Counted from the stretch's first letter, positions 10,563 to 59,072 are shown. The stretch: DNA of 64,000 bases from Macrostomum lignano (GCA_002269645.1 NIVC01001447.1:1-64000); one strand, 5' to 3'. Numbers and translations: made by a program. The notes: generated by a model not told the origin, from the sequence alone.

Positions 10563-11345
10563 AGCCATGGTAACGCTGATTTGATGGATATTGACAGTGT
10601 CCAAAAAGACAATAGTTTGGACAAACAAAAGTCAACATGCAGGATGCTGAATGCTTATCATTGATCATTTTCAACTCTAAGAAAGTCTAGCTGCTAATAA
10701 TTGTAAAATTAAACAGTTAACAAATGAACTTGGCCTAATTCCGAAGCGCGGAGACGGGAGCGGATTCGAGTGTACTTTGATTTAAACAAACAGCTGATCT
10801 CGCATTGATGTAAAATTCGATTTAAAAAATTACAAATTGTAAAATATTGTAAAAAAATTATAGAGATTTGTTTATAAAACTTTTAGTGAGCAAGTTAACA
10901 AAGATAATATTATTTCGCCAACAAATTACAGATGAAAAGATCTGATTAAAAGTTTCAAAAATAGTATCATGATAGTTGCAAAGTCAACCAAGCTATAGGA
11001 ATGTACGCAATGCAGACTGGCTTGTCAAAAGCCAGGCAGAGTTTGCGCGGAAGAGTAGCTGAAAGTGCGTTTTTTAATTGGCAAAAAGTGCGGTAAAACA
11101 AATTCGCACCAGTTCAAATAAGTGTTATTGTGCGACGCGAGACTCGCGATGAAACCTATTCAACAAAAGTAAAAGCGATGAAAAATAATTTCGGGCTAAA
11201 TGTGGAAGTCGTGGAGTGTTTTGAAGTTTGGAATTAGTTTTCATGGAAAAGTTTGGTTGTCGGTGCAAATACTATACGCAGGTATAACGCATATGAGGCT
11301 AGCGAGGCATGCATTTCCTGTCTCCGTTTATGACACCTGTTGCTT

Positions 11346-14300
11346 TCAGTCCTCTTGCAGCAGCTCCAACTGGTGCTTTGAGTTTCTGGAATCATCAGGG
11401 GATAGGTGGTTACACAATAATTTAATTTTAATAAAGCGAATTTTTTAATGAAAACGCGTCGTGGAGCTCGAAAATAACAGTACTCTACGGGAATCCTTGA
11501 GCCTTCAATTTCTTTGCCTTCAAGAACAGAAAGGAGTGTCTGTTCTTCGAAAATATGAATCATCACATGAGGCTTAAAGGGATTCTTATCCGCTCTTTTA
11601 CAGGAAGCAAAACTTAACGAATTGAAGCCCCAAGTGTGCTACCCAGCCTCACCTGAGCTCCATCTCCCGTAGAACCTCAGCGTCGGATGCGCTGGGCGAC
11701 GATGAGGCGCCGTTGTCGCCGCCACTGGATGGAGCCTCAGCGGCCCCGAGCAGATCCACCAGCGGCTGCCGACCCAAACGACGCTCTCCCGCCGCGTCAT
11801 TCTCCGAAGCCGAGCTGCTGCTCAGGCGGATGTCCCGGCTCGAGTCCCGGCCAACTGACAGACCGTCCGAGCGCTGCAGGCTCGGATCGTACAGCGTCTC
11901 GAAGGAGGACTCGAGCGCCAGCAGGTGAATCCGGCCCGCGCGGGCAGCTAGCCGACGGCGCTGCAGATTGTCATCGTCCGAGAAGATGCTGCCGTCGCTC
12001 AGGAAGCCATCGGGCCCGACGCGCCGCGGCAGGCGCAGCTGTCGAGACTCCGACGGTTGAGCCGCGGCTGACATCTGGGGTACAGTCGCCCTCGCGACTG
12101 ACTTCCCGCTGACCATGCGCGGCCTGTCGGGGAGCAGCACCGAGGCTGTGGATCGGGCCTCGACCTTGGGAGATTTGACAGCTTCCGTCGGCTTTGGTGC
12201 CTCCGTACGTTTGTCAGCTTCGTCCGATAGAACGCTTGACGAGATGTCCGTGTCAGTTTGATTGCCTCCGTTTGATTTTGCTCTTTCCTTTGCTTCGCTG
12301 TCATCTGTTTCGTCCTTCAGAGTGTCCTCATCTTCAGAGGAGGTCCCTCCTGATGCGGCTCGACGGCCTTCACCTCTGATCCTTGCAACTTTCTGCTTGG
12401 CCGCCTCGATCAGCGCGTCGTGCGTCGGGTCGGTGACCGGTTGTGGGCGATGCGACTCGGCCTCGGCCGTCTCGCCTCCGTTTTCGGGCCTAACTCGGAC
12501 GCTGAACCGCGGCAGCTGCGACGGCAGTGGAGCCGGTGGCTTCATCGGCGACGGTTGTGGCGTCCTCCGACGCAGCGGATTAGAGCGACGGCTGTCACCA
12601 AGGGCTTCGCTAGAGCGACTCGTGGCGGACTGGGAGCGTCGCTGCGGCGGGCGTCGGCGAGGCGGTCGCTGTCGGTCACCTTCGCCGGAGCCTTCAGCAT
12701 CGCTTGCTGAGGCACCAGTCGAGGAACCTTCAGTGCCGGCTGCTGCGGCAGCGGCTTTTCGATTCTGCCGAGTCGCCCGCAAAGAGCTCAGGATCTTGGC
12801 CCGCGAAGGCGTGCCGCAGACGTCGTTGGCCTCGGAGTCGGAGGAGTACAGGCGGTTGCTGCCCGGATCAGGGAGTCGAGTATCGATCGCGGGCAGCTCC
12901 AGCTGCTCGTTAGGTTCCTCAGCCTCGGCTCGAATCTGGCTGACGATCTGGTCCACACCGGTGACAAAAGCTTCAAACTCTTCGTCGTCCAAATCGGACA
13001 GCGTGTTCCGCAGGTCCTGCTGGAGCAGGCGCTGCTGCTGCATGTCCGGGTTCATGATTGGAGGCGCCGACTGCGTCAGCATGGAGGTTGCCTCGGAAGC
13101 GTCGCGACTTCCTGTCGGAGGCGACATCGGCTGTGGTGCGAGCTGCTCCAGCTGCCGGCTGCCGAGGTCTTCGCCGCCTCCGCTGACGCTGCTGAGGTTC
13201 GGTACGCTGCGACACAGCTGGACGCCATCGCGTTTGCGCCGATCGTTGACTGCGATGCGAACAAAGATCGGCTCGTGCTGCTGGGAAATCTCCGACTCGG
13301 AGCTGCTGCGAGCGCGCACCTTGCCCGGCCCTCTTGCGGCCGACGCGCTGCCCGGCTGTGATGGTCGTTCTTAAAACATTGAAATAAGAAATAAAATATT
13401 TATCGTCTTTGCATAAAGGAGGGTGGCTGTCAGCTCAGAGACAGTTCGTTCAACCCCAACCCACATATACTTCCTGACGACGCCTTGAGGGTTTATATAA
13501 TTATGGGTCCTACCCATGGGTCCGTCGTGCCCGACCAGTTTAAATTTTTCAGCTGCGTTTACGAGTCAGCCTGAGCTTGAAAGCACGCGTAGGTAGTGCA
13601 TGCCTTTTCATTTCACGCATTAATAAATTTCTCACCTGTTGAGCGCTTCACATTGAGTACTTCATTAGGACTAACAGTGCCCGAGCTGCTGAGGCTGCTG
13701 CTGTAAACCGGATGCTGCTGCGTCCTCTGCTGCTGCGGTTGCCTGCCGGAGCCCTGGGAGCCCTTCAGCTCCTGCCTAGACAGCGACGAACCGCGTGCTC
13801 CCGGCTGCGCTGGGATCCGATGCTCCACATCAGCCTCGAAGCTGCTCTCCGATCGTCCGCCTGCCTGGCTTTGCTTTCCATCAGCGTCGAGATTCCTGGA
13901 AAAATTTGCAGGCTTTGGCCGGCCCAGCCGGTTGGAATCTGTTCTCTGCCGCGGACTCCTGGCGGTGCGAATCGAATCCGGGCCGGACTCGCTGGACTTC
14001 TTGCCCGAGTCGTGAGTCCCCGAGGCGGTCCGGTCATTGGAGACGTCCTCAGTGAAGCTGTCCGAGTATTCGGGTTCTTCCAAATTTCCTGCATTGTCCG
14101 GATGCAAGTAACTCTCGCTCGGGCTTTTTTGCTGTGATCCATGAGCCGAACTTGAATTTTCTGCTTGCTTTCAACAGGTTGCGAATCAAAATTCTTTGAC
14201 ATTTCCTGTTGTGTTGCATGACCTGTCGCATCGGTGTCTGCTTGGGCCAACTTCTGGCTCATTTGGTCCCTGCCAGCTCCGGTAGCCTTCGACTGTCGCT

Positions 14301-17300
14301 CCTATCGGCATTGGGAGAGTCGTCCGACCTGCCGGATGATGTTCCACTGGGATCTTTTATAGTCCAGGAAGGTGGGCGGTCGAATTTATATTCGGATGTA
14401 TTTTCTGAGGAAGAATTATCAGCAGATTGACTTTGGGCCTGTTGGCACTGTCGCTCGCATCGGTTCCTTTCAGGAGTTTTTGTTGGCCCCGAAGCCCAAG
14501 TTCAAGCGCTTGTTGTCTTGCCGATTGCATTTGCGTGTTCTCTGACGACTTTGCATCGCCCTGGGCTCCCAGGACCTCTGTGCGAACTCGTTGCTCTGGC
14601 GCCAACTCGATGCTAAAGTTAAGCGACTCTTCAGGAGGCTGGCTTATCCGGGTTTTAATGCTAGTATCTTCCTGAACGAACTCTCCTTGAACAGTTGCAG
14701 CTGAGCTTACCGTCGTGACTGAATTTACTGCATCATCTCCCGCTTTATTCTGGGAATGGTCTACTCCGTCAGTTGCGTCTTTGCTGTAACTGTCTTTTGA
14801 AGAGCTCTTTTGCTCGAATTTCAGTCGCGTTGGAATCTTTGAGCCAGAGAAAAATTGTTCAGAGCCAGTCGAAAACGGACTTGTTCCGCGAACTGGAGGA
14901 GACGCTAGCGAGACGGGCTGCTGTGGGGGCGGCTGCTCCTGCTCGGTTCGTCCTGCGCTAGAAGACCGAGGCTGCAGGCGCCTCACCGGCACGGGAATGC
15001 CCGATCCTGCATGAGTGCCGAACTCCCCGCCAACCGACTGCCCGGATGGAGATCTTGGCGATACGACGGTTCTGGACTGATCAGTAAAATAAGTTTCTCC
15101 TTCAAAGCGAATAGCACCGCTATCTCTAATTGGCACCTCTGGAGATCTGTCTTCTTGTGAGGCATCAGTCCTGGTTGGACCACTTTGCTTCCGGTTTGCT
15201 CGCCCAGAAGCTGCCTTATCTAAAACAGCAGCCATCTGCTGTAAACTTTCGACTCTACTCTCTGGTATTATAGTGCTATTTGAATTGTCTAGACTTCTAT
15301 TGCTGTCAATTCCCCCTGGCTGATTGAGCTGCTGTCGCCAAGTCGGGCTGTCTGACGCAACTGACGCTGTCACTGGCACCCGGTGCTCCAGACTCTGTTG
15401 AGCCTCTTTGATGGTCGTCTGGTCGAGTTTTTCGCAAAGGTCGCGAGGTTGTCTGAGTTCAGAGCAGCCTTGGAGTCTGGCTGAGATCGCACTGGCCTGC
15501 CCTCTCTGCTAGTGTCTGCATCCGGCATCGACTCACTGGAAGTTTCTTCGTTTGAACTGATTTTTCCTTGCGCTGAAAATTTACCCTTTTCGCCGCCGCC
15601 TCGGGTGTCTTTCTCTTCTTTATTAGAATCGTTTTTATAATTGTCAGGCTCCATCTCTGACTTCCTGCCTTCTTTCCAGCCATGCTCAGGTGTGCGCCGG
15701 TTCTCGTGCTGCTTCGATGAGCCTTCTCCAACGCCACTCGGCTTCCCGCGATGCGCATCACCGCCCGACGATGCGGAATCCGTTGGCTCTTCCAAGCGAA
15801 TCAGCGGCTTCTGCTTGGAGTCTTCAGCAGCGTGACGAGCAACTTCAGCATCCGATGCGCTTGATTCACTTGATCTTCGTTCATCTCGCGCATGCGATTC
15901 CGTGGTACTTTCAACTCGTTGCTTATCACCTGGTAGTTGAGCCCCGTCTTTACCAGTTTTCCCCAATAGTGTATCCGGTTCAGAACCCGCAGTTCCCGCA
16001 TTCTGGCCATGTATTTGCGCCCGCTTTGTTGGATCCAGTTGGCCATCAAATCCGGGTTTTGAATCAACTAACTTCAACACTCCGAGCTCGTCATCAAGCA
16101 TTGTCTTTTTGGCTTTATTTTGTTGACCTCCATCGCAGACTTCAGCGTCATCAAGAGATTTTCCGCTTCCCGTTGACAATCTGGCAGATTTCTGCCAGCT
16201 TTCTGTCGGGCTCAATCTCCTCTCAACAGCGCTGTCAGATCTTCCAGACTGATCAGGTGAGTCACTTCGTAACCCAGCTGAACTTTCTCCAGCACTTGTG
16301 CGGTCTCGATCCACGGTTTGACCTTTTATGCTTGGTGAATTCGAATCATCGTCCTCCAATTGCGTGTCCCTCCTGGTTCTTCCCGTGTTCGAAACGGCTT
16401 GCAAAGGCGAATCAAAAGCACTGAGTTGCGCTTGTTCCCCACGCACAGTGGACGCCTCGCTGGGACTTTCGGGGTCTTGATCGCTTAGGCCTTTGTTATG
16501 CTTTTTTGGATCACTTTGGGGCTTTTCTGAGTTCTCGCCAGCAATGCTTTTGCCTAAAATTTTGCTGGCCATCTCAGAGTCGGCTGCACTGCTTCTAAGG
16601 GACGTCTCAGCGTCAGAGAATGTAGTTGAGTTCGATCCTAATTGGTTCAAATCTGCTTTCGTCAATGAATTGTCAGTCCCTCCATCACGACCTCCATGCC
16701 TGCGAACCATGACATCCGCGTGTTGAATTGCGTCGTTCAATTCGTCTGTGGATGTTTTGAGCTTCTCTGAGTTCGCCATTGTTTCGCGTCTTCTACTACT
16801 TGGACGGTTTTGACGGTGCACTGCACCACCATCCGCATCGCTACTAAAATTTTTCTGATCACTGTCAGCTAAGCTGCGTAGACCAGTCTTTCCACCTGAA
16901 TCTGGACGTTTTCCCGAGTCAACAGCGTCAGATCGATGAGTGAAATCAGGTCGATGTTCACTAGCACCGACGTTGAGATCGTCTCGACTCGCTGCGATAA
17001 CTGCGTCTTCAGGCACTTCGCCTCGCTCTGCTTTCAGCTGCTCCTCGTCCTCCCAGCGAGTTCTTCGGGCTGGACTGACGGAACCGCCGGACCGACTTCG
17101 CGCCGGCTTCGACATTGAACTGCTGGGATCGACTTCGGCACTCAAGGACGCAGTTGCCATACTTGGGCCATCATCCTTCGCGGAACTTTCATTAGATAAT
17201 TTACCAGACGTGGACTTCAAATTTCCCTTCCTTTGCTGTCCGTCGCTAGTGGATGCTGCTTTCGTCGCAAAACTGTCCGCTCTGGCTGTCTTCGATGACT

Positions 17301-20300
17301 TTTCGGAGCGATCTCCGTCAGAGTCGCGTGTTCGGCTCCTTGATGGATCACTGATTTGTCCTTGTCCCTGTTTGTCGGGGTGAGAACCTGCTGGAGAAGC
17401 TGTCGAAGAGCGCCTAGATTTTTGTTTCTGGCCAGCATCAATGTCCGAATCGGTTCCGCTCTGCCCGCTTCTGTTGTCTGCACTTGGCTGTTCACCCGGA
17501 GGTTTCCGTTCACCAGCTTCTGTTACCGAACTGCCAGGTTGTTTGCCTCGAGGTGTTCTTTGCAAGCCAAGATCTGGAGTGGATCTTCCATCTCTGTATC
17601 TGGCGCTTCTATCAATGTCACTCTCATGCCCACCTTCAAACTGCCTGCTAGCGCTGACAGGCCCAGAGTACTTTCCAGATATTTTTTCATTTCTGCTTCT
17701 CCGACCATCACTGTCTCGACTGGTGTCTCGTCTGCGGCTTGGCGACTTTGCGTCGACTTGCCTCGTAGAGTCTCGTTGCGCAATGGGACTTTCTAGCCGA
17801 GAATTCGTTTCACCAGACTTGAATTCCACTTCGGCAGCTGGCTTATCGGCTTCGTTTAGACTCTGTCCACTTGGCTTGCTCTGGTGCCGAGGACTCACTG
17901 ATACTGACTGGTCCTTGGGTTGATGGCCGGCTTCAGGCTTTGCGTCAAGCTTAACTTGTCCTTTGCGCCAATCGCCTGGGCTCATCTCAGCAGGCTGTTT
18001 AGCATCGTTTGTATAGCGAGGTACGGACGTTTCTCCTGTCTCCTGTCTCTGGAGCCTGTCTCTGGAACTGGAAGAATGAGAGTCTTCGTTCCGTTTGTCT
18101 TGACTTCTGTCTCTGTCGCTCGAATCAAAAGATCCGTCCAGTTTTTCCCTCTGTCCGTCTATTTCGCCCACAGGTCGAGGGTCGTATCGTCTTTCTTCAC
18201 TTCTGTCTCTCGCACTGGCAGGATGAGAGTCGTCGCACCATCGGTCGCGGCTTTGATCTCTGGCACTGACCGCGAGAGAGTCGTCATTTCGCAGATCTTC
18301 ACTTCCGTCTTTTGCACTTTTACTCTGAGATTCACCTTCCGATTCCGGCTTAAACCTGTGTTTCCCACGCACACGCTGAGAATCGTTGTACCGTTCGTCG
18401 CCGTCGTTTGTGCTTTGGGAATAAAATTCGGCAGTGAGTCCAACACAGGGTCTTTCTCTCGTACTCAAATCCTGTGAATCGTGCCTGCCAGTTCTGTTAA
18501 AAGGATTGTCTACATCTCCGTCACTGTCAAGTACAGCATGAGTATCACCGTGCCGTCTGTCTCGACTTTTGTCTCTGGCACTGGTAGGATGAGATTCACC
18601 GTCGAGACTTTCTTTGACTCCAGAATTCGTTAGCTGTGAGTCATCGTACCTTCTGTCTTTGGCGCCAGCATTGCAAGATTCGCTATCATGTTTGTCTTTC
18701 GATCTGTGCGTGAAACTCGCATCATGAGAATCGTTTTTTCTATTTTTGTCTAATCGTCCATCTCGACCTCCTTTGTTTTCATCCTCAGAACCGTCGTACC
18801 GTTTGTCTCTTGCATTGGGAGGATGAGAGTCGTCTTTCTGTCCGTCTTTACTTCTGTCTCTCGCACTGGTTGGATGAGAGTCATCTTTCTGCTTCTCTCG
18901 TCTTCTGTCTCTCGCACTGGGAGGCTGGGAGCCGTCATACCGTCTGTCTCGGCTTCTGTCTCTCGCATTAGGAGATTGAGCATCATCATACCGTCTGTCT
19001 CGGCTTCTGTCTCTCGCATTGGGAGGTTGAGCATCATCATACCGTCTGTCTCGGCTTCTGTCTCTCTTATTGGATGAATGAGAGTCGTCTTTGTCTCTCT
19101 CTCGGCTTCTGTCTCTCGCGCTGGGAGGCTGATGGCTGTCGTACCGCCTGTCTTTATTTTTCTCCTTTGTGCTGGCAAAATTCAGTTCACTGTGTTGCTT
19201 ATTTTGGGGTCGGTCTTTCAGACTTACAGGCTGAGAATCGTCATACAGTCTGTCTCGGCTTCTGTCTCTCTTATTGGGTGGATGAGAGTCGTCATACCGT
19301 CTGTCTCGGCTTCTGTCTGTAGTGCTGGGAGGCTGAGACTCGTCATACCGTCTGTCTCGGCTTCTGTCTCTCGCACTGGGTGGATGAGAGTCGTCTTTGT
19401 GTCTCTCGCGGCTTCTGTCTCTTGCGCTGGGAGGCTGAGAGCCGTCATAACGTCTGTCTCGGCTTCTGTCTCTTGCGCTGGGAGGCTGAGACCCGTCATA
19501 TCGTCTGTCTCGGCTTCTGTCTCTTGCGCTGGGAGGCTGAGACCCGTCATATCGTCTGTCTCGGCTTCTGTCTCTCGTGCTGGGAGGCTGAGAGGCGTCT
19601 TTGTGTCTCTCTCGGCTTCTGTCTCTCGCGCTGGGAGGCTGAGAGGCGTCATACCGTTTGTCTCGGCTGCTATCTCTCTTATTGGATGGATGAGAGTCGT
19701 CTTTGTCTCTTTCTAGGCTTCTGTCTCTCACGCTGTAAGGCTGAGAGCCGTCATACCTTCTGTCTTGGCTTTTGTGTCTCTTATTGAATGAATGAGAGTC
19801 GTCTTTGTCTCTCTCTTGGCTTCTGTCTCTCGCGCTGGGAGGCTGAGAGCCGTCATAACGTCTGTCTTGGCTTCTGTCTCTCGCGCTGGGTGGATGAGAG
19901 TCGTCTTTGTGTCTCTCTTGGCTTCTGTCTCTCGCGCTGAGAGGCTGATGGCTGTCGTACCGCCTGTCTTTATTTTTCTCCTTTGTGCTGGCAAAATTCA
20001 GTTCACTGTGTTGCTTATTTTGGGGTCGGTCTTTCAGACTTACAGGCTGAGAATCGTCATACAGTCTGTCTCGGCTTCTGTCTCTCTTATTGGGTGGATG
20101 AGAGTCGTCATACCGTCTGTCTCGGCTTCTGTCTGTAGTGCTGGGAGGCTGAGACTCGTCATACCGTCTGTCTCGGCTTCTGTCTCTCGCACTGGGTGGA
20201 TGAGAGTCGTCTTTGTGTCTCTCTCGGCTTCTGTCTCTTGCGCTGGGAGGCTGAGAGCCGTCATAACGTCTGTCTCGGCTTCTGTCTCTCGCGCTGGGAG

Positions 20301-23300
20301 GCTGAGAGCCGTCATAACGTCTGTCTCGGCTTCTGTCTCTCGCACTGGGTAGATGAGAGTCGTCTTTGTGTCTCTCTCGGCTTCTGTCTCTTGCGCTGGG
20401 AGGCTGAGAGCCGTCATAACGTCTGTCTCGGCTTCTGTCTCTCGCACTGGGTAGATGAGAGTCGTCTTTGTGTCTCTCTCGGCTTCTGTCTCTTGCGCTG
20501 GGAGGCTGAGAGCCGTCATAACGTCTGTCTCGGCTTCTGTCTCTCGCGCTGGGAGGCTGAGAGCCGTCATAACGTCTGTCTCGGCTTCTGTCTCTCGCAC
20601 TGGGTAGATGAGAGTCGTCTTTGTGTCTCTCTCGGCTTCTGTCTCTGGCACTGGGAGGTTGAGAGCCGTCATATCGTCTGTCTCGGCTTCTGTCTCTCGC
20701 ACTGGGAGGTTGAGAGCCGTCATATCGTCTGTCTCGGCTTCTGTCTCGACTTCCGTCTCTCGCATAAGGATGCAGAGAGCCGTCATACCGTCTGTCTCGG
20801 CTTCTGTCTGTAGTGCTGGGAGGCTGAGAGCCGTCATAACGTCTCTCTCGGCTTTGTCTCTCGCACTGGGAGGCTGAGAGCCGTCATAACGTCTCTCTCG
20901 GCTTTTGTCTCTCGCGCTCTGAGAGCCGTCATAACGTCTCTCTCGGCTTTTGTCTCTCGCACTGGGAGGCTGAGAGCCGTCATAACGTCTGTCTCGGCTT
21001 CTGTCTCTTGCACTGGGTGGATGAGAGTCGTCTTTGTGTCTCTCTCGGCTTCTGTCTCTCGCACTGGGAGGCTGAGAGCCGTCATAACGTCTGTCTCGGC
21101 TTCTGTCTGTAGTGCTGGGAGGCTGAGACTCGTCATACCGTCTGTCTCGGCTTCTGTCTGTAGTGCTCGGAGGCTGAGAGCCGTCATACCGTCTGTCTCG
21201 GCTTCTGTCTCTAGTGCTGGGAGGCTGAGAGCCGCCATACCGTCTGTCTCGGCTTCTGTCTCTCGCGCTGGGAGGTTGAGACCCGTCATATCGTCTGTCT
21301 CGGCTTCTGTCTCTAGTGCTGGGAGGCTGAGAGCCGTCATACCGTCCGTCTGGACTTCTGTCCCTGTTACTCACTGCTATACCGTCATATCGTTGATCCG
21401 GGTATCCATCTCTACTAATCGCAGCATTTGATTTATTTTCGAATTCCCCTGTGCGGCGTCCATCTTTGCTGCCGGCCTGAGAATTGGTCCTGCCAAGCTG
21501 GTCGAATTGCTGATCCCAACTTCTGTCTCTGGCACTCGTTGGCTGAGAATCGACAAATCTTTCACCTTGACTTTGATCCCTGTTACTGGGAGAATGAGAA
21601 TCGTTGCGCTGCTTATACAGAGTCTTGTCCCTGGCACTTGCTGACTGGGAATCCCGCGCATCTAGAGTCCTGTCGCTGGAATTCGCATGGCTAGGTTTGT
21701 CAGGATGCCTGTCTGGGCTCCCGGTTTTGTCTCTGTCACTGAAAGCATCATCATCAGGGCGTCTATTGTATCCAAGTTCGCTCGGTCTCCGGGAGCTTCT
21801 CGATTCCTCACTGCCGGATCCAGAACCTTCGCGTCTCCGCACACCGCGTCCTGGGGCTGGCTCATTAGCCAACTCGCCTTGTCGATTGGCCCCTGTGGGC
21901 CTCACCGTGCCGGTGGACTCGCCAACGCTGGCTTCCGACTGACTGTAGGTTCGAAGACTTGAGCGTGGCTGCTTTTCGCGCGCCTGTCTGTCTGACGAGA
22001 ACCGGGCGCTCTTGCCGCTGTCGGATTCGAAGCTGGGATGTCTAGCCTCGCCTCTGGGCACACGGAAGCCAAGGTTGTCAACTGGAGCCTTTGAAGCCTC
22101 CAACCGGCTCTGCTCTGCTCGGCTTCGACTTTCTGCTTCTTCTGCGCTGAGAGGCCGCCCGTGGCTCCCGACCTCACTGCCCAGGTTCAGCTTTGGAACT
22201 TTGCGCCGCCGAGTTCCGCTGTCGCGTCGAGATCGTCGCGGTGAACCAGACAGAGTCTCGTCGGAATCGTTGCGTTCTTCGTGACGGTCCCATGGTGCTT
22301 TGCTACGAGACGACGGTCTCCGCGCTGGGCTGCCGCTCAAGGACCGCTCACTGTGCCACCCGGCTGAGTCTCGAAGGCCGGACTGGCGCGGACTTCCCGG
22401 CAGCGATGGGCTGGCTGAGCTGGCGAAGCTCCGTCTGGACTGTCTCTTGGCTCGCTGTCGCTGCGACTGCGCTGTAGGGGCTTCGTTTCCTGCATTCGCC
22501 GACCTGAGCCTGGCCCACATGCTGCTGCACTGCCCATCAGCTCGGTCTTGGTCTTGCGGGCATGAGCGCAGGTTCAAATTAGCGGATTCCGATGTGCCAG
22601 ACGGCTCCCCCTGCAGGTGCGGCTGCTGATGAAAGGCGCCGCTTTCAACCGTTGTGTGGCGTCCTTTGCCGTCGCTCAGCAGGCCCTCGGCATCGGAGAC
22701 CTCATCGTAGAGTCGGGGGCCTTCGAAGTAAGGCAAACTATTGAAAAAATGCTCGGGGCAGGCTTGGGGCAGTGGAGACGTCTGCGTGTGGATATTTTTA
22801 GTGCTGTCGCTGGCAGCTGCTGCGGCTGCGGTGTTTGCGTTGCTATTGGCAACGCTTGGCCCGCCAGCCGTGCCGTACGGCTGCTCAGCTGGCGGGCGAT
22901 GCAAGTTTAAAGAATCCGAGCGAGCTTTGGCCTCGCCAAGGTGCGTCGGCTTCTTTGACGACGGCCGCCGTTCGTGCAGGCCGTCGTCTGAAGAGACCGC
23001 GTTGGACGAAGCCTGTTGTTGTTGCTGTTGTTGTTGCTGCTGCTGCGGATCGGGCGGTCGTCTCAACCAAGGCGTCTGGGTCTGGGACTGGGCGTTTCTG
23101 GCGCTTCCGCGGCCCCGGCGCAGCGCCTCCAGCTCATTGGCGAGCGCCTGGAAGCGGCTGTCCAGCTCGCGGATGGCCTGCCGTCGGTCATCCGACTCGA
23201 CGCGCAACTGGCCGGACAGGTCGCCTTGAAAGCGGCCCCAGTCGGTCAGCAGGTCTCGGACTCGATTCCTCAGACCATCGTCCTGGCTGACCCCATCGTC

Positions 23301-26300
23301 AGCACCGGACGGCTGCTGCGAGTGTCTTGACGCTTTGAGAGCATCGACTTGAGCGGACAGGGCGCGAATCGCCTCGTCTTTGCCGCGGCTGTCGGTGAGA
23401 GCAGAGTTGGGAGTCTTTATTGGGATCTCGTTTGAGGAAAATATGAGTTAAAGTGACTTTTACCTGTCCTCTAACAGCCGCCTTAGAAGATCGTCAACCT
23501 CCGGCCGTCGCTGCTGGCTCTCAGTGGCCAGCTGGCGCAGGCGGCCGATCTCCTGCCGCAGCGCTGCTACCTCCGGAGACGTCGCCGATGAGGCTGCCGC
23601 TGCCGCCGTCCCGATTCCGGCTGCTGTCGATGGTCGCTTCCGCTGCTGCGGAGGCGAATCGAACCCGGCCTCCAGCTGGTCGATGAGCGACTGCTGACGA
23701 CCCAGGAGGTCGCGCGATTCCGCAAGCCTGGTCTGGACGTCCTGCAGATCGCGGCTGAGGCCCGGGGCTGAGGCTGCAGCTCCCAAGTCTTCAATAAGCA
23801 AAGTGAATGTAACGGGATATCAGGAGGTGCACAAGGGGGTTGACAAGGTGTGGTCAGCACTCACTTGGCAGCCGGTAGCCGGATGCAGCAGGTCGTCTCA
23901 GCTGCTCATTCTCCTGGGCCAGCTGCCGGTTCTGATGTCGGAGCTCGTCTAACTGGCTTTGCAACCGGTTGTCCAGTCTGCGAAAGAATTGTCCGGCTCA
24001 CTCTGACCCAGTCTGACTCACTCTGACCCAGTCTGGCTCACTCTGACCCATTCTGACTCACTCTAACCCAGGCTGACTTACTCTAACCCAGCCTGACTCA
24101 CTCTGACTCAGTCTGACTCACTCTAACCCAGCCTGACTCACTCTGACCCAGTCTGACTCACTCTGACCCAGTCTGACTCACTCTGACCCATTCTGACTCA
24201 CTCTAACCCAGTCTGACTCACTCTGACCCAGTCTGACTCACTCTGACCCAGCCTGACTCACTCTGACCCATTCTGACTCACTATGACCCATTCTGACTCA
24301 CTATGACCCAGTCTGACTCACTCTGACCCAGTCTGACTCACTCTGACCAAGTCTGACTCACTCTAACCCAGGCTGACTCACTATGACCCATTCTGACTCA
24401 CTATGACCCAGTCTGACTCACTCTGACCAAGTCTGACTCACTCTGACCCAGTCTGACTCACTCTGACCCATTCTGACTCACTCTGACCCATTCTGACTCA
24501 CTCTAACCCAGCCTGACTCACTCTGACCCAGTCTGACTCACTCTGACTCAGTCTGACTCACTCTAACCCAGGCTGACTTACTCTAACCCAGCCTGACTCA
24601 CTCTGACTCAGTCTGACTCACTCTGACCCAGTCTGACTCACTATGACCCATTCTGACTCACTCTGACTCAGTCTGACTCACTCTGACCCAGTCTGACTCA
24701 CTCTGACCCAGTCTGACTCACTCTGACCCATTCTGACGCACTCTGACTCACTTTGATCATAGTCTAACACATTCTGTGAAGCGCATGACTCACTCGAATA
24801 TTTCCCGACTCGCCGTTACCTATTCTGACTCACTTCCTTCACCCAATCTAGCCTACTTCGAGCCAGTCTGACCCCACCCGACCCGAACTCACTCCTCATC
24901 GCTTTCTCCCAGGCCGTCCTCGCCGCTCCTCGACCTGCCTGCTGGCCGGCTTTTCCCCCGCTTCAGTTCCTCGTTTTCGCGCGCAAGCCGCCGGTTCTCC
25001 TCTTCGATGGCGCGGTTCTCGCCAGCCACGGTCTCCTGGAAGGTGGCCAGGGCGCGGCGCAGCGCCCCCAGCTCGCCCAGCAGGCTGTCGTGCGCCTCCT
25101 GCAGCCGGCACGCTCCTCGTCAAGGCCGGCGCACCGCGCCTGCAGCCGGTCGGCCTCCTGGCGGGCCAGCAGCAGCTCCTGTCGAAGGTCGTCGGCCATG
25201 ACCTCGGCTGGACTGCGCGAATCGGAGCTGTCGATGCCCAGCAGCGAGGCCTTCATCCGGTCGCGCTCGGCCGCCGCGGTTGCCAGCTCCGAGGTCACGT
25301 GATCACGCTCGCGGCGGAGCGCCTGCAGCTGGGCGCGGAGGCCTGCAGTTTCCTGCGGATGTTCGACGGGACCAGGCTGTGTCTAACAGGTGTCCGGCAT
25401 GTCTAACAGTTCTATATTCTGTCTAACAGCTGTCCAGTATGTCTAACAGATCTGAATCTGTCTAACAGGTATCTAATATGCATGTCTAACATGTCTAAAC
25501 AGATCTAGATTTGGTCTAACAGTTCTAGATTTTGTCTAACAGGCATCTAACACCTGTCTAACACAATGTACACTGCCAACAAATCCAACCAATAACCCAC
25601 CTCCTGCTGCCTGGCCATGTGGCCGATGAGCTCCTGGCACTCCTTGCAGAGCACAGCGTTGAGGCTCTTCAGGTGAGCGGCCTCGTCCCTGGCCGAATCA
25701 GCCTCGGACTGCTGCTGGGCTGCCTCCTGGGGATTTTCGACGAGCGGGGAAGCTGGAGACGCGGCTGAGTGTGGCTACTGACGAATTGGGAATGTCTAGA
25801 TGTCGAATTGGGGATATCTAGATGTTGAATTGGGGATGTCTAGATGTCGAATTGGGGATGTCTAGATGTTGAATTGGGGATGTCTAGATGTCGAATTGGG
25901 ATGTCTAGATGTCGAATTGGGGATGTCTAGATGTCGAATTGGGGATATCTAGATGTTGAATTGGGGATGTCTAGATGTCGAATTGGGGATGTCTAGATGT
26001 CGAATTGGGGATGTCTAGATGTCGAATTGGGGATATCTAGATGTCGAATTGGGGATGTCTAGATGTCGAATTGGGGATGTCTAGATGTCGAATTGGGGAT
26101 GTCTAGATGTCGAATTGGGGATGTCTAGATGTCGAATTGGGGATGTCTAGATGTTGAACTGGGGATATCTAGATGTTGAATTGGGATGTCTAGATGTCGA
26201 ATTGGGGATGTCTAGATGTCGAATTGGGGATATCTAGATGTCGAATTAAGCAACAACTTATTTGAGATGTTTATGATGAAGTGAGCTCACATTTTTGGCA

Positions 26301-29300
26301 CAGTCAAGCTCCGATTGCTTCGCGCCCAGCGCAGCATCTTTCTCCTTCAGGGCGCGGGTCAGCGATTCCATCTGCCTGCGGTACTCCTCCGTCTGGCGCT
26401 TCGCCAGCTGCAGCTCCTGGAAGCCATCGGTTCTTGAAATATTAAATATGCTCTTTATCACCGGTTCACACTGTCCCATAACCAGCTCACACTGCACCAT
26501 CACCAGCTCACACTGCCCCATCACCAGCTCACACTGCACCATCACCAGCTCACATTGCCCAGCTGCTTGTTCTGCTGGTCCCTCTCAGCCAGGGCGTCAC
26601 CGAGCCGGTCTGTCTGATCCTGACTGTCCGCCAGCTCCTGCTCCAGACTCTTGGCCAGCGGTGCCAGCTGGTCCAGCTTCTTGGTCTGGTTGTTCAGCCT
26701 GGAGTGGTAGTTCGAGTGGAGTAGATTAGCAATCCATTCTATTCCCCATGTCTGAGGAGTAGATTAGCAATCCATTCTATCCCATGTCTGAGGAGTAGAT
26801 TAGCAATCCATTCTATCCCCATGTCTGAGGAGTAGATTAGCAATCCATTCTATCCCCATGTCTGAGGAGTAGATTAGCAATCCATTCTATTGCTATAATG
26901 CTATAATGCTATAATGCTATCTATCCCCTTGTCCGAGGAACCCTTGTGCATCAGCCGATGCGAGGCAAAAGTCACACCATGGCGGTCACTCACGAGTCGT
27001 TGAGCTCCTTGATCTCCAGTCGAAGTCGTTCATTTTCATTTTTCAAAGGTTCCGCTCGCGGCGTCGGTTGCGGCGGCAGCGGCGGCGGAGGCGGAGGCGG
27101 CGGGGCCGACGGAGGCAGGTACGCCGGCTGGCTGCCGTAGCCGGGGTGATGAGAGCTGGGCTGAAAGTTTGAAACCAAAACTTGCTTGAAAATGAATTCA
27201 AATTTTTATAAGCAGAACTGCTGTGAGCTTCTTGACTCGATAAGCAACTTCATGGCGCCCCTTATCCCCTCATGGCGCCCCTTATTCCTCATGGCGCCCC
27301 TTATCCCCTTCATGGCGCCCCTTATTCCCTCATGGTGCCCCTTATCCCCTCATGGCGCCCCTTATTCCCTCATGGCGCCCCTTATCCCCTTCATGGCGCC
27401 CCTTATCCCCTTCATGGCGCCCCTTATTCCCTCATGGTGCCCTTATCCCCTCATGGCGCCCCTTTATCCCTTTCATGGCGCCCCTTATCCCTTCATGGCG
27501 CCCCATATCCCCTCATGGCTCTCCTTATCCCCTCATAGCGTCCCTTATCCCCTCATGACGCTTCTTGTCCCCTCATGGAGCCCCTTATCCCCATCTTCTC
27601 AATCGCAGCCTCACCTGCGGCGCCGTGTCCCCGTAATTCCAGTCGGCGGAGGCGGAGCGAATCTCGGCGACGTGCGCCGCTGCTTCGCCGACGGCGAGGG
27701 CGAAGGCGAGCGCGACAGCCGCTGCTGCCGGTAGCGGAGCTTCTCGAAGTGGCCTCATCCGCCGCAGCCTCCTTCTCGTCGAGATATTCATCAATATCGT
27801 TGGCTATGGAGGCCAGCTCCTGCCGCGACTCCCGCAGGCTGTTCACTGTGAAGCTGGGTGGCACAGGTGAGGCGATGCGGATGAGAAAGTCTAAGGAAGG
27901 CTGTTTTGCACATTTTAGAATCAAGTTTTCTTAATTTATGTCAGACCCTATTTTTTTCTTGTAACGCAGGAAGGAAGGTCATCTGTAAAAAATGGGTCAC
28001 TAATGGGACAGGGGAGTCACCTGTAGGACAGGGGAAGTCACCTGTAGGACAGGGGAAAGTCACCTGTAGGACAGGGGTAGTCACCTGTAGGACAGGGAGA
28101 GTCACCTGTAGGACAGGGGAAGTCACCTGTAGGACAGGGGGAAGTCACCTGTAGGACAGGGGGAAGTCACTTGTAGGACAGGGGAAGTCACCTGTAGGAC
28201 AGGGGAAGTCACCTATAAGATCGGGGGAGTCACAGAGGGAGTCACCTGTAGGACAGGGGGAAGTCACTTGTAGGAGAGGGGAAGTCACCTGTAGGAGAGG
28301 GGGAGTCACCTGTAGGAGAGGGGGAGTCACCTGTAGGAGAGGGGAAGTCACCTGTAGGAGAGGGGAGTCACCTGTAGGACAGGGGAAGTCACCTGTAGGA
28401 GAGGGGGAGTCACCTGTAGGAGAGGGGGAGTCACCTGTAGGAGAGGGGGAGTCACCTGTAGGAGAGGGGAAGTCACCTGTAGGAGAGGGGGAGTCACCTG
28501 TAGGAGAGGGGGAGTCACCTGTGGGAGAGGGGGAGTCACCTGTAGGAGAGGGGAAGTCACCTGTAGGAGAGGGGGAGTCACCTGTAGGAGAGGGGGAGTC
28601 ACCTGTAGGAGAGGGGGAGTCACCTGTAGGAGAGGGGGAGTCACCTGTAGGACAGGGGTCACCCGTTGAGACGGAAGTCAGCCTGAACTTCCTAAGCCCT
28701 ACACGCCAAAGGGACCAACAGACCAATGCGCACTGCCCAGGTGTTTTCTCTGCAACATAAACCAGCAATCATTTAGAATAAAAGGAGCAGAGACTGAGTT
28801 TCATCGAAAAGTGCCGGGTAATAAAATAAAACTTTATGCTAAACAGGAATCTGTCAGAGTCGCAAGTGGATGAGGCCTCACAAGCCCCGGTGTTAACTAT
28901 TTCGTGACTACTCGCTGCTGAAGAGCTCGGCTGCTTTCAACTGCGCACAAGAATGCCAGATAAAACCCGGTGAGCACATATAAGCCAAGAATGGCAGCAG
29001 CGAGCAGCTCTCAGGCCAGAGAGAAACTGCAAAGCGACAGGGCTGAGCACAGTGAGACGGAGATTTTCTACATTTAGGGCGACGGAAAGACGGAAAGAAA
29101 TTGATGCAGCAGAGGCTTCTCCCCCCCCCCAGTCTCTCTGCTTGCCGAGAGACTGCCGCAACATGCGTGGTAGGCAGGCGGGTGCAGCTCTCAGAAGCGC
29201 TCAGCAGCCCACCGCACGCCGCTGTAGATTCGAGTGCTCAAACACGAGTACTCAACTGATGCGACAGGCAACGCGGCGCACCGGTAAACAGGGCGGCTGA

Positions 29301-30188
29301 CAGGAAAAGCAGAAATATGCAATTTGTAGAAAAGTAAAAGTTGGAATCGAGGAAATTATCACGAACTGAGATAACTTGGGTTGTAGAACTGCCAAGTTTG
29401 ATTCGGTGATGCATAGCCGTTACGTGAATGAGGGAATTTTCTGCCGACTTTCATTCACACTTGCTTCTCTGCCTCTCTCAGTCACTCTCTACTTCTCCCA
29501 GTCCCTCCCTATTTCTCTGTCTCTCCCTACTTCTCCCAGCCTGTCCCTACTTCTCCCGGTCTTTCCTACGTCTCCCAGTCTCTCTCTACTTCTCCCAGTC
29601 TCTCTCTACTTCTGCCAGTCTCTCCCTACCTCTCCCAGTCTCTCCCTATTTCTCTCAGTCTCTCCCTACTTCTCCCAGCCTGTCCCTACTTTTCCCGGTC
29701 TTCTCTACTTCTCCCAGTCTCTCTCTACTTCTGCCAGTCTCTCCCTACCTCTCCCAGTCTCTCTCTACTTCTCCCAGTCTCTCTCTACTTCTCCCAGCCT
29801 GTCCCTACTTTTCCCGGTCTATCCCTACGTCTCCCAGTCTCTCTCTACTTCTCCCAGTCTCTCTCTACTTCTGCCAGTCTCTCCCTACCTCTCCCAGTCT
29901 CTCTCTACTTCTCACAGTCTCTCTCTACTTCTCACAGTCTCGCTCTACTTCTCCCAGTCTCGCTCTCTACTCCTCACAGTCTCTCTCTACTTCTCCCAGC
30001 CTGTCCCTAGTTCAGCCCCAATTGCACAGCCAAGCCAACCTGATGCCGCGGTCGATGAGGCCGCCTCTGTCGGGGCTGCGATAGCCGCGCCTGTCCAGCG
30101 AGCTGAGCCGGCCAGTTGAGCCATAGAATGCGGCGCCGGGGCTTCGGTAGGGCGACGCGGAGGCCGGCCTGTAGCGTTGGGCCTGCAT
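11346..30188 (-). CDS. Giant ~4,478-aa protein with an N-terminal coiled coil and a very long S/R/D-rich disordered region; 13 exons
   Basis: Exons in transcription order: 30040-30188, 28663-28691, 27615-27845, 26994-27160, 26554-26698, 26291-26416, 25601-25774, 24893-25352, 23865-23977, 23464-23788, 13636-23388, 11653-13369, 11346-11385. All junctions are GT-AG and phase-consistent once 8 single-base losses are restored (13,437 nt, divisible by 3). Coiled-coil heptads, e.g. ELQLAKRQTEEYRRQMESLTRALKEKDAAL. Starts MQAQRYRPAS, ends NSKHQLELLQED*. Confidence 0.75.
18000..21650 (-). repeat. Coding 51-bp (17-aa) repeat SQPPSARDRSRDRRYDG inside the giant exon
   Basis: Homogeneous core 18750-21340 with degenerate in-frame copies on both sides; higher-order 816-bp (16-unit) duplication, 19131 vs 19947. 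Confidence 0.9.
23993..24750 (+). repeat. 20-bp intronic minisatellite (CTCTGACCCAGTCTGACTCA)n
   Basis: About 37 copies; reads GTGAGTCAG on the gene's sense strand. Confidence 0.95.
25783..26247 (+). repeat. 22-bp intronic minisatellite (GAATTGGGGATGTCTAGATGTC)n
   Basis: About 21 copies. Confidence 0.95.
26470..26553 (-). repeat. 21-bp repeat made from the splice donor (GTGAGCTGGTGATGGTGCAGT) x4
   Basis: The first unit starts at the GT of the intron at 26553. Confidence 0.85.
26716..26890 (+). repeat. ~37-bp intronic minisatellite (GAGTAGATTAGCAATCCATTCTATCCCCATGTCTGAG)n
   Basis: About 4.5 copies. Confidence 0.9.
27250..27592 (+). repeat. 20/21-bp intronic minisatellite (CATGGCGCCCCTTATCCCCT)n
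   Basis: About 16 copies. Confidence 0.9.
28005..28660 (+). repeat. 21-bp intronic minisatellite (TCACCTGTAGGAGAGGGGGAG)n
   Basis: About 30 copies abutting the donor of the 29-nt micro-exon. Confidence 0.95.
29485..30008 (+). repeat. 20-bp CT-rich intronic minisatellite (CTCTCTACTTCTCCCAGTCT)n
   Basis: About 25 degenerate copies in intron 1 of the giant gene. Confidence 0.9.

Positions 30189-50505: not shown

Positions 50506-59072
<8,567 letters not shown>

What the first reader, a model, noticed from the sequence alone, without database searches (positions are those of the whole stretch)
11346..30188. Hidden ~4,500-aa coiled-coil plus disordered giant protein split across many track ORFs
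Thirteen exons join in consistent phase, including a 29-nt micro-exon and a 9.75-kb exon. The N-terminal ~750 aa are coiled coil. The remaining ~3,700 aa are S/R/D/G-rich with no globular domain I recognise, and there is no signal peptide. Automated annotation would fragment it. Inference: a lineage-specific intracellular scaffold (for example ciliary, centrosomal, germ-granule or nuclear-body).
Basis: partly seen in the sequence, partly recalled or inferred. Interest (0 to 1): 0.75.

Follow-up and report, generated by a model that had tools for sequence, protein, structure and literature searches.

The report
Giant orphan coiled-coil/disordered flatworm gene
The window holds one real, very long gene of the flatworm Macrostomum lignano (about 4,465 codons: a coiled-coil front end and a huge disordered arginine/serine/aspartate-rich tail with 47 tandem 17-residue repeats); it looks broken only because this draft assembly has dropped single bases, it has no detectable relatives outside the species, and its function is unknown.

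Summary
The finding is largely real, but it is neither clean nor fully hidden.

**Source and model.** The window is the first 64 kb of M. lignano contig NIVC01001447.1. On the minus strand, 12 exons join in phase from ATG 30188 to TGA 11346. A 13th, 29-nt exon at 27219-27247 is possible. The model encodes about 4,465 aa.

**Broken frame.** The "9.75-kb exon" (23388-13636) is not one open frame in the window. It needs 17 missing bases. Sixteen were supplied by a 99.3%-identical second contig, and one completes an A-run in a repeat unit. The result is a stop-free 3,257-codon exon. Exon 7 needs one more base.

**Why these are assembly errors.** The indels are short-run deletions, they sit at different places in each copy, and no substitutions accompany them where they hit exon 11.

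**Existing annotation.** GenBank annotates only an 871-aa piece here. UniProt A0A1I8FYU8 (2,507 aa) independently links exons 8-12.

**Protein features.**
- Heptad signal is confined to aa ~170-720.
- The rest is S/R/D-rich, with no Pfam domain, signal peptide or membrane segment.
- An exhaustive search with the last 571 aa found only M. lignano itself.

**Function.** A self-associating, multivalent scaffold is inference only. Interest is modest.

The parts
30040..30188 (-). Exon 1 (149 nt): ATG at 30188-30186. Encodes an R/S/P/G/Y-rich head, MQAQRYRPASASPYRSPGAAFYGSTG...
   Evidence: In-frame TAG 12 codons upstream of the ATG; donor CATCAG|GTTGGC
27615..27853 (-). Exon 2 (239 nt). The frame in its 3' half is ambiguous.
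   Evidence: Acceptor CCACCCAG|C joins in phase with exon 1; donor CCGCAG|GTGAGG. The codon-usage profile drifts f1>f0>f2, which could mean two more 1-nt deletions.
27219..27247 (-). Unverified.
   Evidence: It is the only AG..29 nt..GT segment in the intron. It would link exon 2 (phase 1) to the strong acceptor at 27160. Both of its own splice sites are weak.
26994..27180 (-). Exon 3 (starts at 27180, or at 27160 in the alternatives): poly-Pro stretch, then the start of the coiled coil (LKNENERLRLEIKELNDS).
26554..26698 (-). Exon 4, coiled coil
   Evidence: junctions in phase
26291..26416 (-). Exon 5, coiled coil
25601..25726 (-). Exon 6, coiled coil
24893..25352 (-). Exon 7, coiled coil. It has a 1-nt frame break at ~25105-25109 (GCCGGC). 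Adding one C or G there reads ...LDEERARLQEAH...
   Evidence: Frame f2>f1 is seen in the translation and in the codon profile. No intron-sized GT..AG interval is available.
23865..23977 (-). Exon 8, coiled coil
   Evidence: This is the first residues of UniProt A0A1I8FYU8.
23464..23788 (-). Exon 9, coiled coil with an A/S/G/P linker
   Evidence: 76-nt intron before it and 75-nt intron after it. The junctions are reproduced in P0003 at 100% identity.
13636..23388 (-). Exon 10: 9,753 nt in the window, 9,770 nt or 3,257 codons after repair. It holds the tail of the coiled coil and then a disordered S/R/D-rich region.
   Evidence: Stop-free after adding 16 nt from contig NIVC01000180.1 and 1 nt at 20853-20855. 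The donor at 13636 coincides with the end of the first coding block of the GenBank model on the other contig.
18804..21362 (-). Coding tandem array: 51-nt unit, about 50 copies. There are 47 in-register 17-aa units with consensus YDGSQPPSARDRSRDRR, alternating with a KDDSHPPSARDRSRERH type.
   Evidence: TRF; unit table, third-codon-position entropy 0.73 against 0.38 and 0.49, and 79 synonymous against 166 nonsynonymous differences
20853..20855 (-). AAA run where neighbouring repeat units have AAAA. This causes the frame break f2>f1.
13792..15430 (-). Cluster of 13 gaps (16 nt) that the window lacks relative to the second contig. It breaks exon 10 into many short ORFs.
   Evidence: Filling the gaps restores one frame. 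The same frame is read by P0002 and P0003.
11653..13369 (-). Exon 11 (1,717 nt, 572 aa): mostly disordered with 5 isolated helices
   Evidence: AlphaFold2 mean pLDDT 47, pTM 0.23.
11346..11385 (-). Exon 12: ...RNSKHQLELLQED, then TGA at 11348-11346. An ATTAAA lies at 11078.
   Evidence: P0003 has an identical C-terminus.

Best explanation
This is one intact protein-coding gene of Macrostomum lignano with 12 or 13 exons, spanning 30188 to 11346 on the minus strand and encoding about 4,465 aa. In this PacBio-derived draft its reading frame is interrupted by about 15 single-base consensus deletions. These are assembly errors, not mutations.

**Architecture (shown)**
- An R/S/P/G/Y-rich head of about 165 aa.
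- A segmented heptad coiled-coil region, aa ~170-720.
- About 3,700 aa of low-hydrophobicity polyampholyte. It includes 47 tandem 17-residue units (YDGSQPPSARDRSRDRR) and a C-terminal part with a few isolated helices.

**Mechanism (inferred)**
- The coiled coil makes the protein self-associate.
- The long R/D/S/Y-rich tail offers many weak Arg-Asp, Arg-Tyr, Arg-phosphoSer and Arg-RNA contacts.
- The protein would therefore act as a multivalent intracellular scaffold of a membrane-less body.
- A nuclear RNA-protein (speckle-like) body is most likely, because RD/DR and RS/SR dipeptides are dense and arginine exceeds lysine 5.8-fold in the repeats.

**Confidence by step**
- Real gene broken by assembly errors: about 0.85.
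- One gene from exon 1 to exon 12: about 0.75.
- Scaffold of some condensate or assembly: about 0.5.
- Specifically nuclear or speckle-like: about 0.25-0.3.
For: **Source and assembly**
- The assembly was made with PacBio reads and Canu, then polished with Pilon (PMC5730564).
- 93% of read pairs multi-map in this three-subgenome species (PMC10733133). That explains the poor polishing.

**The breaks are errors**
- The second contig aligns to window 19878-2783 at 99.26% identity with 35 indels.
- Nearly all indels are one base in short runs (CC/CCC, GG/GGG, AAA/AAAA).
- The window lacks bases at 15430-13792. The other contig lacks bases at 19603-16598 and at 13283-11788.
- The other contig's exon-11 deletions come with zero substitutions.
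- Taking the longer version gives 0 stops in 3,257 codons.

**One gene**
- The independent model A0A1I8FYU8 is colinear with aa 479-4465 in 12 blocks of 91-100% identity.
- Splice junctions are in phase with consistent GTGAG donors, and exon GC exceeds intron GC.

**Coding constraint**
- The coding array has a period of 51 = 3x17. The intron minisatellites mostly have periods that are not multiples of three (20, 22, 37, 40), with a few of 21, 42 or 63.
- Third codon positions vary most in the repeat units.

**Protein features**
- 36% of residues in aa 166-720 lie in strong heptad windows. The maximum over 100 shuffles was 7%, and the fraction elsewhere is 0.
- AlphaFold2 puts helices at model aa ~625-723 (residues 2-100 of the exon-10 query) and disorder after that.
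- RD-type and RS-type arginine-rich domains drive condensation and speckle entry in other systems (10.1101/771592).
Against: - No transcript, protein or localisation data could be retrieved.
- Exons 1-7 are joined to the rest only by ab initio splice logic. No database protein contains them.
- Two frame repairs (25105-25109 and 20853-20855) have no second copy to support them.
- The exon 2/3 junction has three competing solutions.
- Amino-acid constraint looks weak. pN/pS is about 0.88 between the two contigs (30 nonsynonymous, 10 synonymous). It is roughly 0.65 among repeat units.
- The tail does not meet the published numerical definition of a mixed-charge domain. The maximum fraction of charged residues over 60 aa is 0.60, and 0.7 or more is required.
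- No RNA-binding or other folded domain was found.
Confidence: 0.6

Rival explanations
1. It is a structural coiled-coil protein of a cytoskeletal organelle (centrosome, ciliary rootlet, sperm or epidermal structure). The coiled coil builds a filament or tether, and the disordered tail is a spacer or docking region.
For: - The heptad region spans ~550 aa.
- Sub-threshold Pfam matches are all to coiled-coil families: CEP85 CC4 (E 0.005), Taxilin, TACC and TSC22.
- UniRef names the partial model "CAP-Gly domain-containing protein".
Against: - None of the Pfam matches reaches its cut-off.
- No CAP_GLY domain is found in the partial model or in my model.
- The coiled coil is only about 12% of the protein and is interrupted by linkers.
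- No PDB relative has E<0.03.
Confidence: 0.15
2. It is a fast-evolving, reproduction-related (germline or sperm) protein of Macrostomum. Its repeats expand and diverge under relaxed or sexual selection.
For: - It is an orphan.
- Substitutions between copies look near-neutral.
- The tandem array shows higher-order duplications.
- Reproduction-related genes evolve rapidly in this genus (abstract of PMC7336406).
Against: - No expression data link it to gonads. The gene cluster id is absent from the supplementary tables searched.
- This reading does not exclude a scaffold role.
Confidence: 0.1
3. The locus holds two or more genes: a ~620-aa coiled-coil gene (exons 1-9) and a separate disordered-protein gene. 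They might be transcribed as a polycistronic precursor and separated by trans-splicing.
For: - About 7% of M. lignano transcripts are multi-gene precursors (PMC5730564).
- No database model contains exons 1-7.
- The GenBank models cover only downstream pieces.
Against: - Exons 8 and 9 are joined to exon 10 by 76-nt and 75-nt in-phase introns, and A0A1I8FYU8 joins them too.
- The coiled-coil heptads continue about 100 aa into exon 10.
- There is no stop between the parts in the spliced frame.
- The repeat array has no Met, so ORF callers could not start there.
Confidence: 0.08
4. The window copy is a decaying pseudogene. The frameshifts are real mutations in one of the three subgenome copies.
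For: - There are 14 frame-disrupting gaps in this copy.
- The species is a recent polyploid with redundant copies (PMC10733133).
- pN/pS is close to 1.
Against: - The gaps are almost all single-base, short-run deletions.
- They cluster in blocks and are reciprocal between the two contigs.
- The seven in the other contig's exon 11 occur with no substitution at all. That is the signature of unpolished long-read consensus, not of decay.
- No premature stop arises from a substitution anywhere in 4,465 codons.
Confidence: 0.07

Closest known systems
Existing database fragments of the same gene: GenBank 871-aa hypothetical protein on this contig (P0001), BOX15_Mlig006583g2 (P0002, 1,176 aa, contig NIVC01000180.1), and UniProt A0A1I8FYU8 (P0003, 2,507 aa)
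   Same: They are the same locus or its subgenome copies. P0001 is 100% identical to window 15370-17985. P0002 is 99% identical. P0003 is colinear with model aa 479-4465.
   Different: - All are partial.
- None contains exons 1-7.
- P0003 skips the whole repeat array and several other stretches, and carries out-of-frame segments.
- P0002 uses a shifted reading around the exon 10/11 junction to get past a deletion in its contig.
- Pfam does not support the UniRef name "CAP-Gly domain-containing".
SRRM2 and SON, the giant disordered nuclear-speckle scaffolds (PMC7671692)
   Same: Very large size, mostly disordered sequence, R/S-rich, and internal tandem peptide repeats. The proposed role as a multivalent condensate scaffold is also the same.
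   Different: - No sequence homology was detected.
- No Pfam family of any kind reaches its cut-off on any part of the model. That includes the N-terminal domain of SRRM2 and the C-terminal folded domains of SON, which I know these proteins carry (my own knowledge).
- This protein has an N-terminal coiled coil, which those proteins lack, and its tail is Asp-rich.
Arginine-rich mixed-charge domains such as those of U1-70K, CPSF6 and NELF-E, and synthetic RD50 (10.1101/771592; PMC9324279)
   Same: - In the repeat region, RD/DR occurs 144 times and RS/SR 79 times.
- R/K is 5.8 and net charge is near neutral (+0.076 per residue).
   Different: - The charged fraction is 0.48 (maximum 0.60 over 60 aa), below the 0.7 used to define such domains.
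- The charge blocks are diluted by a Y-D-G-S-Q-P-P-S-A spacer in each unit.
- The array is far longer, about 860 aa.
Coiled-coil proteins with long disordered tails, such as nucleoporin TPR/Megator and NuMA (from my own knowledge, not tested here)
   Same: General layout: an oligomerising coiled coil followed by a long charged disordered tail.
   Different: In those proteins the coiled coil dominates (more than 1,000 aa). Here it is about 550 aa out of 4,465. No homology was found.

Membership tests
CAP-Gly domain-containing proteins (name given by UniRef to A0A1I8FYU8) | Presence of a CAP-Gly domain (Pfam CAP_GLY) | tested here: not met
   The Pfam scan of P0003 and of every part of my model found no CAP_GLY match even at E<=1. 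No suitable ORF lies upstream of the ATG.
Coiled-coil proteins (structural class) | Heptad periodicity of hydrophobic residues over at least 28-residue stretches, beyond what composition gives | tested here: met
   A home-made heptad score places 36% of aa 166-720 in strong windows. The maximum over 100 shuffles was 7%. Segments: 175-204, 236-265, 318-361, 406-434, 477-506 and 684-723. AlphaFold2 shows long helices at model aa ~625-723, i.e. residues 2-100 of the exon-10 query. The score is crude and is not COILS or MARCOIL.
Arginine-rich mixed-charge domain proteins (definition in 10.1101/771592) | A stretch of more than 60 aa with fraction of charged residues >=0.7 and a positive:negative ratio of 1:0.7-1.3 | tested here: not met
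   The maximum fraction over any 60-aa window is 0.60, and no window reaches 0.7. The definition was read.
Arginine-rich mixed-charge domain proteins | Arginine strongly preferred over lysine | tested here: met
   The repeat region has R 202 and K 35.
Arginine-rich mixed-charge domain proteins / nuclear-speckle components | Localisation to nuclear speckles; condensation of the purified domain | not testable with these tools
   This needs tagged expression in M. lignano or a heterologous cell, and an in vitro assay.
SR / SR-related splicing proteins | An RS domain together with an RNA-recognition motif or another splicing-factor domain | tested here: not met
   RS/SR dipeptides are frequent (178 in the protein). 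No RRM or other domain was found by Pfam.
SRRM2 / SON orthologues | Sequence homology, including their conserved folded domains | tested here: not met
   No Pfam family reaches its cut-off. The word-indexed searches of the N-terminal part and of the first 662 aa of exon 10 found nothing, and the search with aa ~3037-3880 found only the two M. lignano fragments. The exhaustive search of the C-terminal 571 aa hit only M. lignano. The N-terminal part could not be searched exhaustively.
Pseudogene | Frame disruptions that are genuine and accompanied by other signs of decay (substitution-derived stops, shared lesions) | tested here: inconclusive
   The lesions are not shared between copies, are short-run deletions, and occur without accompanying substitutions in exon 11. 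There are no substitution-derived stops. This argues strongly for assembly error, but raw reads were not available.

The most novel reading that the evidence does not exclude
This is a flatworm-specific (possibly genus-specific) giant organiser of a so far undescribed membrane-less body, nuclear or germline. A coiled-coil oligomerisation module is fused to an ~860-aa array of R/D/S/Y 17-mers. It would be a natural, repeat-number-tunable condensate scaffold that arose de novo by minisatellite expansion in a genome unusually rich in minisatellites.
Probability: 0.12. Interest if true: 0.6.

Novelty: new member of a known kind. Interest (0 to 1): 0.3.

Why it matters
**Practical value**
- It shows concretely how unpolished single-base deletions in the Mlig_3_7 draft reduce a gene of about 13.4 kb of coding sequence to an 871-aa "hypothetical protein".
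- It shows that comparing the near-identical subgenome copies can restore the frame.
- It supplies a full-length model for a gene that current databases hold only in pieces and under a misleading name.

**Biological value**
- If the protein is expressed as modelled, it is among the largest proteins of this model flatworm.
- It is an orphan with a clean two-module design: an oligomerising coiled coil and a long regular R/D/S/Y repeat array.
- It can be tested directly in M. lignano, where transgenesis and RNAi exist.

**Limits**
- Giant disordered orphan proteins are common in animal genomes.
- Nothing here ties this one to a process, so the interest is moderate at best.

Tried and rejected
1. 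**N-terminal search.** A word-indexed homology search with a 729-aa spliced N-terminal query gave no hit. The same index also failed to return A0A1I8FYU8, which shares 208 identical residues with that query. Its negatives are therefore weak.
2. **Pre-repeat part of exon 10.** The same kind of search gave no hit. I had hoped it would reveal another annotated copy whose flank covered exons 1-9. It did not, so the exon-7 and exon-2/3 problems have no second copy.
3. **Chimeric query.** I tried to send a query of head, coiled coil and C-terminus to the exhaustive search. Exon 11 was sent instead.
4. **CAP-Gly lead from the UniRef name.** Rejected by Pfam.
5. **Strict mixed-charge-domain membership.** Rejected on the charged-fraction criterion.
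6. **Short intron to explain the exon-7 frame change.** Only a 13-nt GT..AG interval exists. Rejected as too short.
7. **Genes on the opposite strand.** The plus-strand ORFs inside the locus have no real Pfam match. The DUF4214 "hit" on the antisense of the repeat has no individually significant stretch.
8. **Expression data.** The cluster id Mlig006583 was searched in full text and in the supplements of four M. lignano papers. Nothing was found.
9. **Non-coding RNA.** Rfam and tRNA scans of the window found nothing.
10. **First codon-usage profile.** It was trained partly in the wrong frame. It was discarded and redone.
11. **Contig look-up for P0003.** No gene with exactly this product is on record in that collection.


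Full report
**Where the window comes from.** A single-exon glycosyltransferase ORF at 61305-62684 (minus) is an annotated gene of GenBank assembly GCA_002269645.1, contig NIVC01001447.1, at the same coordinates. So the window is the first 64,000 nt of that 67,597-nt contig. A protein search returned a near-identical protein named [quoted passage not shown]. The assembly (Mlig_3_7, accession NIVC00000000) was built from PacBio reads with Canu and polished with Pilon (PMC5730564). The species carries three near-identical subgenomes. In it 93% of read pairs map to several places, and 36% of the assembly length lies in chimeric scaffolds (PMC10733133).

**Raw observation.** All long open frames in 11-30 kb are on the minus strand: 20040-23447 (1,135 codons), 15370-20883 (1,837), 14357-15508 (383) and 11649-13370 (573). 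They lie in three different frames and overlap at their ends.
- The first change of frame sits in a 51-nt coding repeat unit. That unit reads ...GACAAAGCC... where the two preceding units read ...GACAAAAGCC... (20853-20855).
- A further change of frame lies inside a coiled-coil exon at about 25105-25109, in GCCGGC. No usable intron exists there, and the codon-usage profile confirms the shift.

**A second copy shows the breaks are assembly errors.** The end of contig NIVC01000180.1 (locus L003) aligns over its whole 17,095 nt to window 19878-2783. Identity is 99.26%, with 88 substitutions and 35 indels.
- Thirty-one of the indels fall inside the gene.
- Nearly all are one base in a short run (CC/CCC, GG/GGG, AA/AAA).
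- They come in blocks. The window lacks 16 nt in 13 events between 15430 and 13792.
- The other contig lacks bases between 19603 and 16598, and again in exon 11 (13283-11788).
- The seven exon-11 deletions in the other contig are accompanied by no substitution at all.
- Inserting the 16 bases the window lacks, plus one A at 20853-20855, turns 23388-13636 into one stop-free exon of 9,770 nt, or 3,257 codons.
- In the 1,726 codons compared, the other two frames hold 42 and 134 stops.
- The restored frame is the one read by the GenBank model P0002 and by UniProt A0A1I8FYU8.

Real decay would give substitutions and shared lesions. What is seen is the pattern of unpolished long-read consensus in a region where short reads cannot be placed uniquely.

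**Gene model.** The ATG is at 30188, with an in-frame stop 12 codons upstream.

| Exon | Window coordinates (minus strand) | Note |
|---|---|---|
| E1 | 30188-30040 | start codon |
| E2 | 27853-27615 | frame ambiguous in 3' half |
| E3 | 27180-26994 | or starts at 27160 |
| E4 | 26698-26554 | |
| E5 | 26416-26291 | |
| E6 | 25726-25601 | |
| E7 | 25352-24893 | one base missing |
| E8 | 23977-23865 | |
| E9 | 23788-23464 | |
| E10 | 23388-13636 | 17 bases missing |
| E11 | 13369-11653 | |
| E12 | 11385-11346 | TGA 11348-11346 |

- The repaired coding sequence is 13,398 nt, or 4,465 aa, with a single terminal stop.
- All introns are GT..AG, and 8 of 11 donors are GTGAG.
- Exon GC is 0.60-0.71 (0.54 for E10, 0.50 for the 40-nt E12) against 0.40-0.55 in introns.

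The weak point is the E2/E3 junction, which has three possible solutions.
- A direct join needs the weak acceptor at 27180.
- The strong acceptor at 27160 is reached in phase through the only possible 29-nt micro-exon, 27247-27219.
- The strong acceptor is also reached if E2 has lost two more bases. The codon profile hints at that, drifting f1>f0>f2.

I could not decide between these.

**Independent support for one gene.** An exhaustive phmmer search of exon 11 against 1.84 billion representative proteins returned a single hit, P0003. This is UniRef100_A0A1I8FYU8 from M. lignano, 2,507 aa.
- It is colinear with my model from aa 479 (first residue of E8) to the last residue, in 12 blocks of 91-100% identity.
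- It reproduces the E8/E9 and E9/E10 junctions and the C-terminus ...ELRNSKHQLELLQED.
- It skips the whole repeat array and several other stretches.
- In the window GenBank calls only one gene in 5370-27985, an 871-aa ORF at 15370-17985.
- On the other contig GenBank calls a 1,176-aa model. Its first coding block ends at the position equivalent to the 13636 donor.
- The annotation pipeline assigns ORFs to assembled transcripts with TransDecoder (PMC5730564). This explains why only the longest Met-initiated piece was kept. The repeat array contains no Met.
- Exons 1-7 are in no database protein that I could reach. Their attachment rests on phase, splice signals, codon usage and the continuity of the coiled coil.

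**The protein.**
- Composition is S 14.8, R 13.1, D 10.1, A 8.4, G 6.8 %.
- Hydrophobic residues (VILMFWC) make up 12%.
- The maximum 19-residue hydropathy is 0.93, so there is no membrane segment and no signal-peptide-like N-terminus.
- No 50-residue window exceeds 34% hydrophobic residues.
- A simple heptad score puts 36% of aa 166-720 in strong windows. The maximum over 100 shuffles was 7%, and the fraction is zero in every other region.
- The first ~165 aa are not coiled coil.
- No Pfam family reaches its cut-off. The best sub-threshold matches are coiled-coil families.
- No PDB sequence scores below E = 0.03.
- AlphaFold2 without an alignment gives three helices in the first 100 residues of exon 10 (model aa ~625-723) and disorder afterwards (pLDDT 43).
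- For exon 11 it gives five isolated helices in a disordered chain (pLDDT 47, pTM 0.23).

**The repeat array.** The array at 18804-21362 has a 51-nt unit in about 50 copies.
- I aligned 47 in-register 17-residue units. The consensus is YDGSQPPSARDRSRDRR, alternating with a KDDSHPPSARDRSRERH type.
- A roughly 270-aa higher-order duplication is visible.
- Variation is highest at third codon positions (entropy 0.38 / 0.49 / 0.73).
- Differences from the consensus are 79 synonymous against 166 nonsynonymous, where 12 against 39 sites are available. This indicates some constraint on the peptide.
- Intron minisatellites mostly have periods that are not multiples of three (20, 22, 37, 40), with a few of 21, 42 or 63, and are more homogeneous.
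- Between the two contigs the non-repeat part of exon 10 shows 10 synonymous and 30 nonsynonymous differences, pN/pS about 0.88. The amino-acid sequence of the disordered part is therefore barely constrained, while the open frame is.

**What it probably does.** Nothing here is shown. This is inference from architecture.
- A segmented coiled coil should oligomerise.
- An ~860-aa array rich in RD/DR (144) and RS/SR (79) dipeptides, with one Tyr per unit, R/K 5.8 and near-neutral net charge, offers many weak contacts. Such contacts drive condensation and nuclear-speckle entry of arginine-rich mixed-charge and RS domains (10.1101/771592; PMC9324279). They are also used by the giant speckle scaffolds SRRM2 and SON (PMC7671692).
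- I therefore favour a self-associating multivalent scaffold of a membrane-less body, most likely nuclear.
- It is not a member of those families. The charged fraction peaks at 0.60 over 60 aa, below the 0.7 of the published definition. No RRM or other folded domain is present, and no homology was found.
- The UniRef label "CAP-Gly domain-containing" fails a direct Pfam test.
- Rivals are a cytoskeletal or centrosomal structural protein, a fast-evolving reproductive protein, two genes in one transcription unit, and a true pseudogene copy. They are scored in the rivals section.

**Verdict.**
- The claim of cleanly phased exons holds only after repairing at least 14 frame-breaking single-base gaps. 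I attribute these to the assembly.
- The gene is fragmentarily, not wholly, absent from databases.
- It is an orphan as far as the searches reach. The N-terminal 720 aa could not be searched exhaustively.
- I file it as a new member of a known kind (giant coiled-coil plus disordered repeat proteins), of modest interest until expression and localisation are known.

Noticed in passing
window 2783-19878 versus L003 (NIVC01000180.1 end): Differences between the two contigs are mosaic. All but 3 of the 88 substitutions lie in 13815-19868. About 11 kb (2850-13815) has none, only single-base indels. This may reflect scaffold chimerism or collapse between subgenomes, or recent gene conversion.
   Followed up: partly
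window ~19878 (inside the coding repeat array 18804-21362): Contig NIVC01000180.1 (832 kb) ends exactly inside the 51-nt coding repeat array. The assembly broke there, so the second copy gives no information on the upstream half of the gene.
   Followed up: partly
window 35100-38020: A large inverted duplication. Plus-strand ORFs at 35258-36600 reappear as minus-strand ORFs at 38017-36980. It contains 151-nt tandem repeats (35731-36657, 36959-37612) and lies between two apparent exons of the neighbouring E2-enzyme gene.
   Followed up: no
window 39217-40728 (+), possibly starting at 35118-35390 (+): A ubiquitin-conjugating-enzyme gene (Pfam UQ_con, E 6e-13, covering profile positions 50-119). 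It has a ~400-aa acidic, Ala/Ser/Asp-rich C-terminal extension and is transcribed divergently from the giant gene. The upstream ORF looks like the N-terminal part of the fold by eye but gave no Pfam hit.
   Followed up: partly
window 46539-47201 (+): An exon encoding ribosomal protein uL6/RPL9 (Pfam Ribosomal_L6, E 1e-30).
   Followed up: partly
window 61305-62684 (-): A single-exon 459-aa glycosyltransferase with a DXD sugar-binding region (Pfam Gly_transf_sug, E 3e-7). Its N-terminal half carries TPKT(V/G)HKT(D/E)SQ repeats. It is annotated in GenBank.
   Followed up: partly
whole window, e.g. 893-1336, 2737-4134, 9585-10568, 23997-24747, 28006-28658, 57902-58841: Minisatellite density is extreme: 42 TRF rows with score >=300. 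Most introns of the giant gene are largely filled by 20-22-nt or 37-nt arrays. Several arrays create long spurious ORFs, for example 9568-10584 with a "Mucin-like" sub-threshold hit.
   Followed up: partly
P0003 = UniRef100_A0A1I8FYU8: Pfam finds no CAP_GLY domain, so the database name "CAP-Gly domain-containing protein" is unsupported. The model also contains out-of-frame stretches, for example KPWIETAKVLEKVQLGYEMREF..., so that assembly has indels too.
   Followed up: yes
window 20139-20813 (+), antisense of the repeat array: The antisense translation of the repeat gives a Pfam DUF4214 "hit" (E 1e-8) with no individually significant stretch. It is a low-complexity artefact.
   Followed up: yes
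search tools: The word-indexed protein search never returned A0A1I8FYU8, although that protein shares long identical stretches with all three queries. The exhaustive search found it. Negative results from the word index are therefore weak for this locus.
   Followed up: partly
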